From the NCBI GenBank assembly GCA_964019335.1, contig OZ025687.1, positions 124,001 through 188,000 of the forward strand: a stretch of DNA of 64,000 nucleotides. Direction: 5' to 3'. The notes below the pieces were generated by a model, which saw only the letters and a list, made by a program, of their open reading frames with translations, had not been told where the DNA came from and searched no databases. The DNA comes from Diplonema japonicum (lineage: Eukaryota > Protista > Euglenozoa: Diplonemea). The position numbers and the translations under genes were made by a program. Positions 5,246-46,650 of the stretch are shown one piece after another (position 1 is the stretch's first letter; every line of letters starts with the position of its first letter).

Positions 5246-6403
5246 TCACAAAACCTCGAAAGAACATGGAACATCCTTTTGCAAAGTCGGTGTGGTGGGT
5301 GAGGCACTGCTCCAAGCACGGAGGATGACGGCGGCCTCGAAGACAAAAAAGCTGAGAAGAGAAAAAACACAAACACGCCACCAGTAAGCCTGCTCGGGCA
5401 CAGGGTCGACACGGGTCATAGTGTGGCGGGTGGACAGAATCCTGAGAGTTTCACGGAGCTTGTGAAGGTCCCCCACTTGAGGACGTGCAGGGGGTTCGAG
5501 AGTTGTACCCAGCAAGAAAGGCATTTTCGGCTTGCTCACATCTATCACGTGCACATGCCCACGGGTCCCTGCGAACAGCACGGTTCTACCGTGGTCCATG
5601 CGTACGTGCAGGGAGGTCACTGCCCCGCTTGTCTCGTAGCTAGCTGCCAGTGCAGGATGGTTCGCATCACGAACGTCCACAATGTGCACCGCATGCCTGT
5701 CCCCCACGTAGGCAGTACCCTTTGCAGCCTTCACAACATACGCTCCGCCGCCTGTGTTGAAGGCCCCCACCACACGGGGGTTCGCAGGGTCATGCACATC
5801 GACCACGCACATCCCGTCAAGCTCCGCAACATAGGCGTATCCCCCCACCACAGACACGTCGGAGGGGTTGCCAGGAGTCTCTAGCTCCGCCACTAGTACC
5901 GGTGAGGCAGTGTTTGTCACGTTCACTATGGTGAGCCCGTGCCCCCAGTCGGCAACGTAGGCTAGGTCGTGCTGTACAGCCACGCCCCACGACAGGCCGC
6001 GGAGGTGCCCCTTCGCACCTCCCAGGGACCCTACCATCTTTGCCGTTGCTGGATCCGTCGCATTGCATATTTGCAGCCCTTCCTCGCTTGTGAGGTACAC
6101 CATCCTCTTCCTTACAACGATCCCTTTCCCGCCACGTACACCCGGACACGTTCCAACCCTCACTAGGCTGCCTTCTGTTGTCTTTAGGATTTCAACCTTG
6201 TCTGTTTGCATCACGTACACCAAGCCCTCGTCCTCGTACACACTAAGAGGCCCCTCCTCCTCTGCAGGGTGACCGCCGCCCCTCAACGTCGGAAACCTCG
6301 TATTACTCACATCGATTATTTTGAGCCCATCTTTTTCAGCCACGTACAGCTGTCTGGCGTCCAGAAAGACTGACATAAGCAGCACAAGCATGGCTGTCTT
6401 CAT
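5246..6403 (-). CDS. LVIVD-repeat beta-propeller membrane or secreted protein
   Basis: 385-aa ORF with a signal peptide, repeated AYVAD..GL.IVDVS.P..P units and a C-terminal hydrophobic segment. Confidence 0.85.
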   Translation of the reverse strand: MKTAMLVLLMSVFLDARQLYVAEKDGLKIIDVSNTRFPTLRGGGHPAEEEGPLSVYEDEGLVYVMQTDKVEILKTTEGSLVRVGTCPGVRGGKGIVVRKRMVYLTSEEGLQICNATDPATAKMVGSLGGAKGHLRGLSWGVAVQHDLAYVADWGHGLTIVNVTNTASPVLVAELETPGNPSDVSVVGGYAYVAELDGMCVVDVHDPANPRVVGAFNTGGGAYVVKAAKGTAYVGDRHAVHIVDVRDANHPALAASYETSGAVTSLHVRMDHGRTVLFAGTRGHVHVIDVSKPKMPFLLGTTLEPPARPQVGDLHKLRETLRILSTRHTMTRVDPVPEQAYWWRVCVFSLLSFFVFEAAVILRAWSSASPTTPTLQKDVPCSFEVL

Positions 6404-40149: not shown

Positions 40150-40528
40150 CAACAATTCACAGATGGCCTGGAGAGACGGGTTTTTGAAGTGAAAAAGAAG
40201 GGGGGGGGGGGGGAAATAGAGAAAATAATGTTGAAAATAGTTAAGCAAAGTATATTCTGTTTTTTTCTTTTTGTAACTTGAACTTTTTTGTCATACTGTA
40301 AAAAATCGCATAATTTTTTGTCAGGGAAGAAAAAGAAGGCTAAGGCTTCCTGTCCCGGAAAACTTGTGTTCTCTTTTTTTTTTTGGGTGTCCCTTTTCCT
40401 CCGAGGAAAAATCAAGAGAGTTTACAGTTTTTTTTTGTTTCTCCCTCTCCCCTGTGTCTTTTTTTCTTTTTTTGCTGCGAGCGGAAAAATCAGAAAAGCC
40501 AAAAAAAAAAAAAAAAAAAAAGGGAATG

Positions 40529-40613
40529 TATGAGTTAAAGGTGAAACGCCCCCTGAGAAAAAAAAAAGACAAAAAATATATGAGTTAAAGGAAGTCTCTG
40601 TGAGACGCCCCCT
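40529..40613. repeat. Short tandem duplication
   Basis: tatgagttaaagg...gtga(a/g)acgccccct occurs twice (~40529-40554 and ~40579-40613). Confidence 0.8.
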
Positions 40614-41136
40614 TGTTCTCATCTTCTACCTGCACCTATCCCCTTTCAGCAGCGGTTTCTCCTCCTTTGGTGGTCTTGCCGGCCTTCCCAGCCTGGCCGC
40701 TCTTTCTCTTCGTTCTCTTGCCCATTGTCCTTTCAACGCCTCTAGGTCATGCTTGGTCTTCGGTGATGCAAATATCGCCCTCCTGTTCCATCCGATCACC
40801 GCCTTTGTCCTCCCGATGGATCGTAGTGTGTGCACCCTTGTGCACGGCTCGTCAGAAGGCCCTCCTTCCTTTCACCTTCTTCAGTACCCTTCCTAGCTCC
40901 CATGTGTGCCAGATCTTCTTCATCAATCCATGCAATCTCCTCGCTTTCTGCTGTACTTCTGCGAGATCCCCCAGCTTCCCTCGCCGAACGGGGGCTGCCC
41001 TGCCGACTGGACCACCGCCAGTTGCCGCCCCTTCTTCGGGATGACCGTCGCATCCTTCCACCCGTTGTTCCGTTGCACCGGCTTCTGACCTCGCCGTTCG
41101 CGCCACCTGCACCCATGATGATGATGCTGCCTCCTT

Positions 41137-41248
41137 CTGGGGAGTTTGCTCCCCCCTCGGGAGGGGACCCAGGGCCACCACGTGGAGGTTCCCCAGCCAT
41201 CTTTGATTGCGATTATTTTGATTAATTCCAACCCAAATTACCGGCCCC
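41137..41248 (-). ncRNA. HDV-like self-cleaving ribozyme (predicted)
   Basis: Minus strand: P1 GGGGCC (41248-43)/GGCCCT (41176-71) with G-U at the cleavage site; P2 CTGGGGA (41196-90)/TCCCCAG (41143-37); P3 ACC/GGT; L3 TCCACGT; P1.1 CC/GG (41170-69); P4 TCCCCT-cccg-AGGGGG; J4/2 GAG-C-AAAC with candidate catalytic C at 41148. Confidence 0.8.
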
Positions 41249-42322
41249 TGAAAAAAAGTTTCAAAATTTTCTTTTGCAACTATTTTACACGCCCCCCCCC
41301 CCTTTTTTTCGTTCCCTTTCTTTTGGTTTGTCTCTGGTCTTTTAACCTTTAAAGCTGGGTGGAATTAAAAACAAAAAAAAGAAGGACAGCAACACGAACG
41401 TTTCACTCAGAATAGTTAAAATAGGACCTGAAGAATGCGAAGATGGAGGGAGTGGGAAAAAAAAACGAATGGAGAAAAAAAAAAAGAAAAAAATGGGAGA
41501 GAGAAACAATTCTGCCAAAAGCCATTTTTCTTTTTTTTTTTTTTTTTCTCGAGACTTGGTAACCTTCGCGAGAGAAGAGAGAAGAAACCGCAAAATGCGG
41601 GTTTTCAAATTCTCATCACACGACCAGAATTCACTTTGTTTCTCTCCCCCCCTGTTCCCTCGTTCCAACAGTTGAACCTCAGACGTCCCCCAAACTAAAG
41701 GGGGCTTTTCTCAGTTCAACTTGATGAAGAAGAATACACAATTTAAAAAAGAAAAACTGACACCCATAAACGTAGAGAATATTTTCTTTTTGAAAAAGTA
41801 GAGAGGGGCGAGGGAAGAACGCGCACCAAAAAAGAAACTACGTTAAAAATCACCCCCCCCCTTTTTTTATATAAACTTACCCACCATTATCTGTGGGTTA
41901 GAAGAGGGAACAACTGGCCGTTGTTTGCACGTGCCGGGCAAACCTGGAGAAGTTTGTAAACCCGAAACACGGTTGTCAACGTTTCCCCTTTTGTTTAGAC
42001 AAGTCAAAGACTCGTTCTTGCAAAAAGAATTGACACACACACACACTCACACATCAGCAGATATTGTCACACAAAAAAAAAAAAAAAAAAAAAAAAAAAA
42101 ACAGACGGTAATAAAATTGAACAACAAACCAAGACGCACCCCCCCCATTAAAATGAGGCAAAGTAATGTCGTAATAGGGAGAAGAACAAAAGGGAAAAAA
42201 AGAAAAAAAAAACAAAAAAAAAACTGAACCGAAGGAAGGGGAAGAAAGGAAAGAGAGGAATTTTTATAAGAAGGTGAAGAATAAGAAAGAAAGACTTTTT
42301 TTTTCCCCCTCCCCTGTTTATT

Positions 42323-44655: not shown

Positions 44656-46650
44656 TCACTTCTCTTCCAGAACCGCAAAGTGAGAGCAGAACCCTGATTC
44701 GTTGTACGGAGTACCAGCTACGACGCTCTGCTGACCGTGCAAGATGAACCCCACACCCTGTGGCTGCACAGGGTCGTTAGGCTTGGGTGAGTTGACATTA
44801 GGGAGGTAAAGAGTAGCATTGGTAGTTGAAATCACACTAAAGATGACCTCCTGGACTCCCTGGAACCAGTTGTAAAATCCACCACCAAACAGCACAAATC
44901 CATTGCTGTTCTCCACAGTAATCCCGTAGGCAGTGGGCGGGACCTGCCAGTAAGGCGTTTCAGTTTGAGGGATGGCCATAAAGACATTGCTTGCACCGTG
45001 TATCAAAAACTGGAACTCGTAGCAGTGCTCGAAGGCGGCACCCACTAGGTACAAAGGCTCCTCCTTTGAGTTGACGCGCATCCCGTGCGGGGTTTTCACT
45101 GTAATCAGCGCTCCTGTGTCGATGTTGTGGTCAGCCACCCACCCCCACATGTTTTCGATGTACCCGCCCCCACTTGTTGTTACGTGAATCATTTCCTTCA
45201 CATCGTGGTACAGCCTGACATGGACATCCCATGCTGCCCCTCTCCCTGCACCCCATCTCAGCAGCAGCACGTTCGGTACATCCGCTTCTGCTGTTAAAAT
45301 TAACTTCACCAGCATCGTCTCGGCCAGCCTGTCGTTTGGTGTGCTGAGCATTGGTGTCGTGATGGGCCTCGTGAAGTGTGCGGACTTCGCAGCGCGTATC
45401 TCGCTCATCGAATCACCGATGAGCTTCGTGTCGCTCCTAAGATGCAGAGTGTTCGACACCAGGTAGCACCCGTAAGGAAGGAACACCTCGTCATGCTGGT
45501 CGATGGCTTTCTGCAACGCCGCCGTGTCATCTGCCTTGCAGTCGCCCTTCGCACCTGCCTGGTACACGTTGAACGGGCTGGTGAAGGCAGGCAACGGCCT
45601 GTTCTCCACAGGCACGTCTGGTCTCTGTGGAGTAAAGAAGCCACGCATGCCCGTCTCGCCGATGGCATGCCCCTCACGCCATGCCCTCACGTAAGCAGGC
45701 GCGGGCACTATGCTCTCGGAGCAGTTTGGCGTCATGTAGCACGCAGTGAGGTTTGCCACGCCTGAGGTCGCCACCCTTTCCAGCACAATGCTCCGCGACG
45801 CTGCAGGCCAGTGGAAGTCAGTCCATATCGCTGTCCCCACGTTCGTGAAGGAACTGTCTGCGACAACAAGGCCCCCTGCCGTGCCTTGGTACTGGATCCC
45901 TACGGGGCAGTTCGTCATCTCTAAACCAATGAAGGTGAAAACCCAGTTCCACAGTATCTGAATCCCAACGGACCTGCTGTTCATGACTTTCACGGACAGG
46001 AAGGTCCACTGCTGCGACCCATACACCAGGCCTATCCTCCCGCCATCAACGGTGACGTCGCTCATGAGCCCGCCGCTGCCGTTCTCGCAGAAGATGCCTC
46101 CTTCTGAATTACCTGCTTTGATGACAACGTTACGCAGCGAAGTGCCCTGCGACACTGCCCAGTGCACACCGAAGGCGCCCTCGTTGCCCGGCTCGGTCAT
46201 GTCTATAACGACATTGTTGAGCTGGTAGTAGAAGTCGTCAGTGTGCTGGCACCCATTGCACGAGGCAGGGCCCGCGACAACGTACTTCCTGGTGCCTGCA
46301 GGGACGGAGTTGGCCTTCAGCTTGAGGGTGGCAGGACAGGCCTGGTTCCCAGCAAGCATGGTATAGAAATAGAGCTGCAGCTGGTCGCTGACGAGATAGG
46401 TGCCAGGAGGAAGGTACACCTTGAGCTGCTGCTCGGTGGACCGGATGTCCTGCCTGCCCGAGATGAGGGCGGCAGTGATGGCAGCTGTGTCGTCATGAAC
46501 ACCGTCACCGACTGCACCGTAGTCCTTCACATTGCGCACCCACGGGCCTCGTTCCGTGCTGTCGTACCATGTCTCGCATGGGTCGCTGCTGCTGATGTTC
46601 AAGCCATGCACACAACACGCTAGCGACACAACGAAAGCAGCATGCTGCAT
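44656..46650 (-). CDS. Secreted GH55 beta-1,3-glucanase (laminarinase)
   Basis: Signal peptide, two beta-helix starts (RNVKDYGAVGDGVHDDTAAI and AGAKGDCKADDTAALQKAI), HWAVSQGTSL, GSQQWT, ENMWGWVADH, QTETPYWQ. Confidence 0.9.
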   Translation of the reverse strand: MQHAAFVVSLACCVHGLNISSSDPCETWYDSTERGPWVRNVKDYGAVGDGVHDDTAAITAALISGRQDIRSTEQQLKVYLPPGTYLVSDQLQLYFYTMLAGNQACPATLKLKANSVPAGTRKYVVAGPASCNGCQHTDDFYYQLNNVVIDMTEPGNEGAFGVHWAVSQGTSLRNVVIKAGNSEGGIFCENGSGGLMSDVTVDGGRIGLVYGSQQWTFLSVKVMNSRSVGIQILWNWVFTFIGLEMTNCPVGIQYQGTAGGLVVADSSFTNVGTAIWTDFHWPAASRSIVLERVATSGVANLTACYMTPNCSESIVPAPAYVRAWREGHAIGETGMRGFFTPQRPDVPVENRPLPAFTSPFNVYQAGAKGDCKADDTAALQKAIDQHDEVFLPYGCYLVSNTLHLRSDTKLIGDSMSEIRAAKSAHFTRPITTPMLSTPNDRLAETMLVKLILTAEADVPNVLLLRWGAGRGAAWDVHVRLYHDVKEMIHVTTSGGGYIENMWGWVADHNIDTGALITVKTPHGMRVNSKEEPLYLVGAAFEHCYEFQFLIHGASNVFMAIPQTETPYWQVPPTAYGITVENSNGFVLFGGGFYNWFQGVQEVIFSVISTTNATLYLPNVNSPKPNDPVQPQGVGFILHGQQSVVAGTPYNESGFCSHFAVLEEK

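What the first reader, a model, noticed from the sequence alone, without database searches (positions are those of the whole stretch)
41137..41248. Complete HDV-like ribozyme fold inside a polycistronic gene cluster
Seen: the minus strand reads A|GGGGCC-[46-nt J1/2]-CTGGGGA-ACC-TCCACGT-GGT-GGCCCT-GG-G-TCCCCT-CCCG-AGGGGG-GAG-C-AAAC-TCCCCAG. All five helices of the nested double pseudoknot pair in the right order: 6-bp P1 starting with a G-U wobble, perfect 7-bp P2, P3, P1.1 and P4. There is a C-A-A J4/2 for the catalytic cytosine. Known: HDV-like ribozymes mark the 5' ends of non-LTR retrotransposons (R2, trypanosomatid L1Tc/ingi 77-79-nt signature). The core ACCTCCACGTGGTGGCCCTGGGTCC resembles my recollection of the ingi/L1Tc core CACCTCAACGTGGTGCCAGGGTC. 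Inference: it faces the same way as every gene here, so it would be transcribed and could cut the polycistronic pre-mRNA ~1.1 kb upstream of the methyltransferase gene. I know of no description of such ribozymes in diplonemids, but I cannot search.
Basis: partly seen in the sequence, partly recalled or inferred. Interest (0 to 1): 0.9.

Follow-up and report, generated by a model that had tools for sequence, protein, structure and literature searches.

The report
HDV-like ribozyme heading a diplonemid LINE
The motif is a real, complete HDV-like self-cleaving ribozyme fold, and it forms the first 112 bases of a truncated retrotransposon copy in Diplonema japonicum; this is a known arrangement in other organisms that I could not find reported for diplonemids.

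Summary
My HDV descriptor hits only this site in the window and about 0.003 times per shuffled window.

The motif is not a free-standing element. Its predicted cleavage site, 5' of G41248, is the exact 5' end of a dispersed repeat with at least 32 copies and unrelated T-rich upstream flanks. Full-length copies are about 6.3 kb and carry one roughly 2030-aa ORF with an APE endonuclease and a reverse transcriptase, so they are non-LTR retrotransposons (LINEs). They have no poly(A) tail and sit in T-runs. The window copy is an internally deleted remnant of about 675 bp.

At least seven LINE/SINE-like families in this genome (most likely Diplonema japonicum) start with the same fold. They show compensatory changes in P1, P2, P3 and P4. 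L3 (UCCNNGN), the P1.1 GG and the J4/2 motif C-N-R-A are conserved.

Most likely the ribozyme cuts the element RNA out of polycistronic read-through transcripts, as in R2 and L1Tc. Cleavage itself is untested, because no raw RNA reads were available.

I class it as a new member of a known kind. I found no paper on diplonemid ribozymes. This scan had already noted the same system elsewhere in this genome (s1-866996).

The parts
41137..41248 (-). Complete HDV-like ribozyme fold (112 nt). Predicted cleavage lies between A41249 and G41248.
   Evidence: Sequence read; descriptor parse; covariance model R1 scores it at 134.7 bits; covariation across families.
41243..41248 (-). P1 5' strand GGGGCC. 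It pairs with 41176-41171 (GGCCCT), and the first pair is G.U. It is also the first base of the repeat.
   Evidence: P1 position 5 takes the forms C-G, G-C, U.G, A-U and G.U in different families.
41197..41242 (-). 46-nt J1/2 insertion with a possible P1.2 helix (41237-41233 with 41206-41202).
   Evidence: 5 bp with one compensatory U-A to A-U change between families A and B. Peripheral J1/2 domains are known in other HDV-like ribozymes (PMC4908430, PMC3774820).
41190..41196 (-). P2 5' strand CTGGGGA. It pairs with 41143-41137 (TCCCCAG).
   Evidence: All 7 P2 pairs show compensatory changes across families.
41177..41189 (-). P3 (ACC/GGT) enclosing L3 (TCCACGT). The two L3 Cs pair with G41170 and G41169 to form P1.1.
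   Evidence: P3 changes from A-U to G-C in family F, and L3 keeps UCCNNGN in every family parsed.
41150..41167 (-). P4 hairpin (7 bp in this copy).
41144..41149 (-). J4/2 GCAAAC. The predicted catalytic cytosine is C41148.
   Evidence: This C is invariant in alignment A1, and the C-N-R-A motif is present in all parsed families.
41114..41116 (-). ATG of the LINE ORF (MGAGGANGEV...), 20 nt downstream of the ribozyme.
   Evidence: The same N-terminus is found in the D. japonicum transcriptome protein P0001.
40576..41248 (-). Internally deleted copy of a ~6.3-kb APE+RT LINE. It corresponds to element positions about 1-181, 762-882 and 5864-6280 of the full-length copy in L032.
   Evidence: BLAST of the window against L032; Pfam RVT_1 and Exo_endo_phos hits on the full-length ORF.
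41250..41257 (-). Upstream flank: T7 then C, followed by A41249. This is target DNA, not element.
   Evidence: Homology among copies stops at the G+1 base, and the flanks differ between copies.
40527..40554 (-). A second, solo 3'-end fragment of the same LINE, followed by a T-run (40520-40499).

Best explanation
The 112-nt motif is an HDV-like self-cleaving ribozyme that forms the 5' end of a non-LTR retrotransposon in Diplonema japonicum. The elements have no poly(A) tail, insert into T-runs and mostly point the same way as the host genes, so they are transcribed as part of long polycistronic transcripts. The ribozyme folds into the nested double pseudoknot and cuts just 5' of G+1. This frees an element RNA whose first base is G+1. 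That RNA is translated from an ATG 20 nt downstream of the ribozyme and is used as the template for target-primed reverse transcription. This would explain why full-length genomic copies begin exactly at G+1. The window copy is a dead, internally deleted remnant whose ribozyme is still intact. It would probably still cleave the read-through transcript between 41249 and 41248. The fold, the boundary coincidence, the covariation, the LINE identity and evidence of expression are shown. Catalysis, co-transcription and the effect on host RNA are inferred.
For: (1) The fold is exactly as described. (2) The predicted cleavage site is the 5' boundary of the repeat in about 30 family A/B copies, whose upstream flanks are unrelated. 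The same holds for families C, D, E, F, H and I. (3) Full-length copies encode APE and RT in a single ORF of about 2030 aa. (4) Seven families share the fold with different helix sequences. In my parse, 8 of 17 P1/P2/P3/P1.1 positions show compensatory double changes. On the model-aligned alignment A3, P2/P3/P4 are 96.5% paired against 64.4% in shuffles, 14 of 18 pairs are compensatory and 0 of 500 shuffles reach the observed values. With the flanks shuffled, a parse that places P1 at the true boundary appears in 0-4 of 2000 trials per family. (5) L3 UCCNNGN, the GG of P1.1 and the J4/2 C-N-R-A motif are conserved. (6) Sub-threshold Rfam hits fall on the cores and are to HDV-like families: RF02682 at 26.8 bits and E=0.048, and RF01787. 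(7) The element is expressed: D. japonicum transcriptome ORFs match at 95-100% identity and start at the same ATG. (8) In a crude proxy test, 26 of 29 copies have the longest ORF of the 1.5-kb upstream flank on the element's sense strand (p=1.5e-5). (9) Core motifs occur 105, 33 and 18 times in the genome, against 0 for the reversed-pattern controls.
Against: There is no biochemical or RNA-end evidence. The only runs available were assembled contigs, which cannot show RNA 5' ends. No Rfam family reaches its gathering score. Nearest-neighbour folding favours a competing nested structure (-40 kcal/mol, z = -0.09 against shuffles). The nested parts of the HDV fold score about -24 kcal/mol, and P1 alone scores a further -8.6. 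J4/2 is 1-2 nt longer than the canonical C-N-R-A in most families. The 'all pairs canonical' result is partly circular, because the parser requires pairing. Alignment A3 was fitted to the model's structure.
Confidence: 0.85

Rival explanations
1. The conserved structure is a non-catalytic 5'-UTR module of the LINE, such as an internal promoter like Pr77, an IRES-like element or a binding site for the element's protein. In this reading it only resembles an HDV fold, and the 5' end is set by transcription initiation.
For: The 5' boundary could equally be a transcription start. L1Tc's Pr77 acts as both promoter and ribozyme (PMC3185411). Thermodynamic folding does not favour the HDV fold.
Against: The features that are conserved are the ones needed for catalysis: the G.U pair at the cleavage site, L3 UCCNNGN, the 2-bp P1.1 and the C-N-R-A motif in J4/2. 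The helices meanwhile covary freely. A promoter or a protein-binding site would not be expected to preserve a double pseudoknot through compensatory change.
Confidence: 0.09
2. This particular copy has been co-opted by the host to process or down-regulate the neighbouring genes' transcript. This is the reader's idea of a cut in the pre-mRNA upstream of the 'methyltransferase' gene.
For: The copy is in sense orientation in a spacer between minus-strand ORFs. Leishmania SIDER2 ribozyme-bearing elements in 3' UTRs have been linked to mRNA down-regulation (PMC4035085).
Against: It is one of more than 150 similar copies and is 95% identical to young full-length elements, which points to a recent insertion rather than a conserved host feature. 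It lies about 1.3 kb after the upstream ORF's stop codon and about 330 nt before the next ORF, a stretch that is probably discarded anyway by polyadenylation and trans-splicing (this step is inference).
Confidence: 0.05
3. The match is a chance occurrence of a permissive descriptor.
For: About 2.6 hits per genome are expected from shuffled sequence. In the metagenome scan with the 16-base core pattern, 79 of the 80 loci I could read lacked the rest of the fold, so those core matches look like chance.
Against: Only about 0.003 hits are expected per window. The site coincides with the repeat boundary, recurs in seven families and is supported by covariation.
Confidence: 0.01

Closest known systems
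L1TcRz / Pr77 hallmark of the trypanosomatid L1Tc/ingi clade (PMC3185411, PMC4035085)
   Same: Both are HDV-like ribozymes occupying the very first nucleotides of an APE+RT LINE and its short derivatives, in a euglenozoan with polycistronic transcription. P3-L3-P3' is almost identical: ACCTCnACGTGGTG, 13 of 14 bases compared by eye with the L1Tco sequence returned.
   Different: Here +1 is G with a G.U pair, where L1Tc has C. P1.1 has 2 bp, where L1Tc has 1. Most families carry a 40-56-nt J1/2 insertion. The elements have no poly(A) tail and no detectable RNase H domain. Promoter activity was not tested. Membership of the RT in the ingi clade is unresolved.
R2 retrotransposon HDV-like ribozyme (PMC3774820)
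   Same: A 5'-terminal ribozyme releases the element RNA from a host co-transcript. J1/2 loops are long (up to 498 nt in silkmoths), the P1.1/P3/L3 core is conserved and the P1 stems covary.
   Different: R2 uses a restriction-enzyme-like endonuclease, inserts only into 28S rDNA and often cleaves upstream within 28S sequence. The diplonemid elements use an APE endonuclease, are dispersed in T-runs and have cleavage predicted at the element's own first base.
Large HDV-like ribozymes with a J1/2 peripheral domain, drz-Agam-2 type (PMC4908430)
   Same: A structured insertion between P1 and P2 (the P1.2 helix). Family E has a clear ACAC.../GTGT... hairpin there, and families A and B have a weak 5-bp helix.
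   Different: Whether the diplonemid J1/2 domains speed up cleavage is unknown. Family H does without one: its J1/2 is 3 nt and the whole ribozyme is 76 nt.
Genomic/antigenomic HDV ribozyme and Rfam HDV-like families (RF00094, RF02682, RF01787)
   Same: The same order of P1, P2, P3, P1.1 and P4; the U...G spacing in L3; the catalytic C followed by N-R-A. The HDV residue names used here come from my own knowledge.
   Different: Sequence divergence and the J1/2 insertion keep every copy below the Rfam gathering scores.

Membership tests
HDV-like self-cleaving ribozymes | Nested double pseudoknot with the strand order P1-(J1/2)-P2-P3-L3-P3'-P1'-P1.1-P4-J4/2-P2' | tested here: met
   The same order is found in families A, B, C, D, E, F and H.
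HDV-like self-cleaving ribozymes | Helices supported by compensatory base changes | tested here: met
   14 of 18 P2/P3/P4 pairs are compensatory and 0 of 500 shuffles reach the observed values. P1 position 5 takes five pair types. Caveat: both the alignment and the parse are structure-guided.
HDV-like self-cleaving ribozymes | Cleavage site immediately 5' of P1, with a G.U wobble as the first pair | tested here: met
   G+1.U is invariant in all families, and G+1 is the repeat's 5' boundary. This was tested at the sequence level only.
HDV-like self-cleaving ribozymes | Catalytic cytosine in J4/2 (C-N-R-A) and an L3 that supplies two Cs for P1.1 with a GG | tested here: met
   J4/2 carries 1-2 extra nucleotides in most families and is exactly CAAA in family F.
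HDV-like self-cleaving ribozymes | [quoted passage not shown] | not testable with these tools
   Only contig-level runs were available.
HDV-like self-cleaving ribozymes | Match to a curated Rfam HDV-like covariance model at its gathering score | tested here: not met
   No hit at gathering score. No HDV-like family appears at the window locus even at E<=10. The best hit elsewhere is RF02682 at 26.8 bits against a cut-off of 44.
APE-type non-LTR retrotransposon (LINE) | A single element encoding an APE endonuclease and a reverse transcriptase, dispersed copies, 5'-truncated or deleted derivatives, and no LTRs | tested here: met
ingi/L1Tc clade with Pr77 | APE + RT + RNase H, a poly(A) tail and the 77-nt Pr77 sequence (PMC12278014) | tested here: not met
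   No RNase H hit in Pfam at E<=0.01. The 3' end is ...CTCATAT(AT)n followed by a T-run, with no poly(A). Only the P3-L3 core resembles Pr77. An RT phylogeny against ingi references could not be run.

The most novel reading that the evidence does not exclude
The ribozyme-headed LINE is ancestral to the diplonemid + kinetoplastid lineage. On this reading the near-identical P3-L3-P3' core of the D. japonicum elements and of L1Tc/ingi Pr77 is inherited rather than convergent. The pairing of a promoter-less, sense-oriented LINE with a 5' HDV-like ribozyme would then be an old adaptation to polycistronic transcription. A side effect would be more than 150 self-cleaving sites seeded into spacers and introns that can affect host RNA processing.
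Probability: 0.3. Interest if true: 0.65.

Novelty: new member of a known kind. Interest (0 to 1): 0.5.

Why it matters
HDV-like ribozymes at LINE 5' ends are established in insects (R2 and others) and in trypanosomatids (L1Tc/ingi, SIDER). Showing them in several diplonemid LINE/SINE-like families extends the system to the sister group of the kinetoplastids, which is among the most abundant groups of marine protists. It also gives a clean natural covariation series, from 76 to 127 nt and with or without a J1/2 domain. It offers a mechanism by which tail-less elements that apparently rely on read-through transcription can obtain a defined 5' end in a genome transcribed polycistronically. Finally, it identifies more than 150 candidate self-cleavage sites that should be taken into account when annotating D. 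japonicum transcripts.

Tried and rejected
- **Rfam:** scans at gathering score and at E<=10 over the locus gave no HDV-like family. Only sub-threshold hits appeared on other families' cores.
- **Nested MFE folding:** uninformative for a pseudoknot (z = -0.09), and it favours a competing fold.
- **Sequencing runs:** all eight are Logan contigs. They show no RNA starts or ends, and the two runs guessed to be RNA do not cover the ribozyme.
- **Metagenome scan:** Of the 80 loci returned as sequence, one (L147) has a full fold, and it is unrelated to diplonemids.
- **The fetch from genomes:** I tested orientation on the existing 1.5-kb flanks instead.
- **RT clade placement:** the distant protein search returned mostly unnamed metagenome proteins, so the clade stays unresolved.
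- **MAFFT multi-family alignment (A2):** it put P2' and P1' out of register in families F, H and E, so I did not use it for pair counting.
- **Family I/F core pattern:** I mis-specified it by one base and it returned nothing.
- **Trans-splice acceptor idea:** I considered that the upstream T-run plus A|G might define the 5' end by trans-splicing. I rejected this because the copies carry no spliced-leader sequence at their 5' ends (this is inference).

Full report
**Observation**

- P1 is GGGGCC paired with GGCCCT. The first pair is G.U.
- J1/2 is 46 nt long.
- P2 is CTGGGGA paired with TCCCCAG, a perfect 7 bp.
- P3 is ACC paired with GGT and encloses L3 (TCCACGT).
- The GG after P1' can pair with the two Cs of L3 to form P1.1.
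- P4 is a 7-bp hairpin.
- J4/2 is GCAAAC, with the candidate catalytic C at 41148.

I wrote an HDV-like descriptor and ran it on both strands of the window. It finds only this locus. In 1500 dinucleotide-preserving shuffles of the window (192 Mb scanned) it found 4 hits. That is about 0.003 expected per window and about 2.6 per genome. A single hit is therefore unlikely at this locus, but on its own it would not be conclusive genome-wide.

**What the motif belongs to**

A DNA search of the window's own genome found at least 32 copies of the 131-nt region. When the copies are aligned with their flanks, homology begins exactly at the G that the fold predicts as +1. Upstream there are unrelated sequences, typically a T-run followed by zero to four A or C bases.

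Downstream the repeat continues. Two full-length copies (L031, L032) are about 6.3 kb long and have one ORF of about 2030 aa. That ORF hits Pfam Exo_endo_phos (4e-12) and RVT_1 (2e-25). This is an APE-type non-LTR retrotransposon.

The 3' end reads ...CTTTAACTCATAT(AT)n and is followed by a T-run. There is no poly(A) tail.

The window copy retains element positions of about 1-181, 762-882 and 5864-6280. It is an internally deleted remnant of about 675 bp (41248-40576). A further solo 3' fragment lies just behind it.

The element's ATG (41116-41114) lies 20 nt after the ribozyme.

**Organism and expression**

- The RT region is 100% identical to a Trinity ORF from the EukProt Diplonema japonicum transcriptome. 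Several isoforms exist, and they start with the same MGAGGANGEV.
- The genome size (62.5 Mb, longest contig 1,191,308 bp) matches the published D. japonicum YPF1604 assembly (PMC13598402).
- Related LINE proteins occur in D. ambulator and D. papillatum at 33-52% identity.

**Other families and covariation**

I built a covariance model from families A and B (R1). That model and a core-pattern search found further families in the genome.
- Families C, D, E, F and H parse into the same fold with different helix sequences.
- Examples of P1: GGGGGC/GCCCCT, GGGGTC/GGCCCT, GGGGGTT/AGCCCCT and GGGGACC/GGTTCCT.
- Examples of P2: CCGGCGC/GCGCCGG, GGCTGCC/GGCAGCT, GGTGGG/CCCACC and GTTTCC/GGAAAC.
- P3 is GCC/GGC in family F.
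- Families G and I look similar but did not pass my parser.
- L3 stays UCCNNGN, P1.1 stays CC/GG and J4/2 stays G-C-N-R-A plus 0-2 nt.
- J1/2 ranges from 3 nt in family H (76 nt in total) to 56 nt in family F (127 nt in total).

The statistics are as follows.
- In my structural table, 8 of 17 P1/P2/P3/P1.1 positions carry compensatory double changes.
- On the model-fitted alignment A3, P2/P3/P4 are 96.5% paired against 64.4% after shuffling. Fourteen of 18 pairs have changes on both sides, no shuffle in 500 reaches the observed values, and sliding the partner columns drops pairing to 38-48%.
- The parser requires pairing, so I ran a separate control. I kept each family's conserved anchor and shuffled its flanks. 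A complete parse with P1 at the independently known 5' boundary appeared in 0-4 of 2000 trials per family.
- In every family homology starts at G+1.
- Exact core motifs occur 105 times (H), 33 times (A/B/E) and 18 times (C/D) in the genome. The reversed-pattern controls gave none.

**Context and mechanism**

The flanking ORFs in the window are on the minus strand, like the element. For 26 of 29 family A/B copies the longest ORF in the 1.5-kb upstream flank lies on the element's sense strand (p=1.5e-5). This is a crude proxy for gene orientation.

The sense-strand T-runs at both ends point to a likely model. The elements insert into T-tracts in a fixed orientation, are transcribed by read-through within polycistronic units, and use the ribozyme to create their own 5' end. 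This is the role shown experimentally for R2 and L1Tc (PMC3774820, PMC3185411).

For the host, this copy would add a cleavage site in a spacer about 1.3 kb after one ORF and about 330 nt before the next. I have no evidence that this matters for the neighbouring genes. The 'methyltransferase' label for the downstream ORF rests only on sub-threshold Pfam hits.

**Weak points**

- No cleavage data and no RNA-end data exist. The only runs served were assembled contigs.
- Rfam's HDV-like models do not reach their gathering scores. The best sub-threshold hits on two family cores are, however, HDV-F-prausnitzii and drz-agam-1, on the correct strand and at the correct position.
- Nearest-neighbour folding prefers a competing nested structure (-40 kcal/mol) over the nested parts of the HDV fold, so folding may be kinetically controlled.

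**Comparison with known systems**

The closest known system is L1TcRz/Pr77 of the trypanosomatid ingi clade.
- The diplonemid ribozymes are more canonical than L1TcRz, with a G.U pair at +1 and a 2-bp P1.1.
- Most carry a J1/2 insertion. Such insertions are known from drz-Agam-2 and R2.
- The elements lack the poly(A) tail and the RNase H domain that define ingi.
- I could not place the RT phylogenetically.

I therefore file the motif as an HDV-like ribozyme by all features I could test at the sequence level, but not as a demonstrated member of the Pr77/ingi lineage.

**Novelty**

No paper in the searchable library combines diplonemids with self-cleaving or HDV-like ribozymes. Neither the D. 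papillatum genome paper nor the D. japonicum genome note mentions ribozymes.

Within this scan, another agent had already described the same tail-less, T-tract-inserting, ribozyme-headed LINE system on another piece of this genome (s1-866996). My analysis reached the same picture independently before I read that note.

Noticed in passing
L073:1-145 (= G000:C82:395031-395223): A full-length U2 snRNA copy (138.8 bits) ends 7 nt upstream of G+1 of a family D element, and this flank is not T-rich. It could be a template-jump chimera made when the RT reached the RNA's 5' end, or an ordinary insertion next to a U2 gene. Seven dispersed full-length U2 copies exist in the genome.
   Followed up: partly
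L079, L080, L081, L092, L095, L098 (upstream flanks): Copies of families E, G and I sit directly behind the A-run of another repeat that ends ...CCATGGCGGCCCTGCATTGGTATTTTG(A)n. This is a different, poly(A)-tailed retroelement that seems to attract these insertions.
   Followed up: no
L084-L087; genome-wide count: Family H is the most abundant ribozyme-headed repeat, with 105 exact core copies. Its ribozyme is compact (76 nt, J1/2 = 3 nt). The variants L088 and L101 have lost P4, J4/2 and P2' and are probably inactive.
   Followed up: partly
L032:1170-1350 (ORF residues about 400-450): The N-terminal, low-complexity part of the LINE ORF contains a run of about 50 threonine codons. Its length differs between the genomic copy and the transcriptome ORF.
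   Followed up: no
window 41293-41339 and 41434-41527: Short segments just upstream of the element show very high contig depth and many loose ends in the runs, so they are other high-copy repeats. The stretch 41436-41571 is an A-run/T-run inverted repeat that draws spurious miRNA and RNase P hits from Rfam.
   Followed up: no
window 44656-46650 (-): A 664-aa ORF with a strong pectate-lyase-like hit (PF12708, 1.8e-70). This fits the carbohydrate-degrading gene content reported for Diplonema.
   Followed up: no
L147:1253-1316 (+), metagenome contig Ga0126339_10073619: A compact 64-nt sequence passes the strict HDV descriptor (P1 GGCTGC/GCAGCT, L3 TCCTCGT). It is probably an unrelated HDV-like ribozyme from another eukaryote.
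   Followed up: no
L068 (G000:C11:408016-408430): One family C copy has a short duplication of its first ~20 nt, so a second GGGGGCGGAA start follows the first.
   Followed up: no
J1/2 of families A-F (for example window 41200-41198): The J1/2 insertions of several families contain an ATG. In the window copy the ATG at 41200 opens a 134-aa ORF that is out of frame with the LINE ORF. Its significance is unknown.
   Followed up: no
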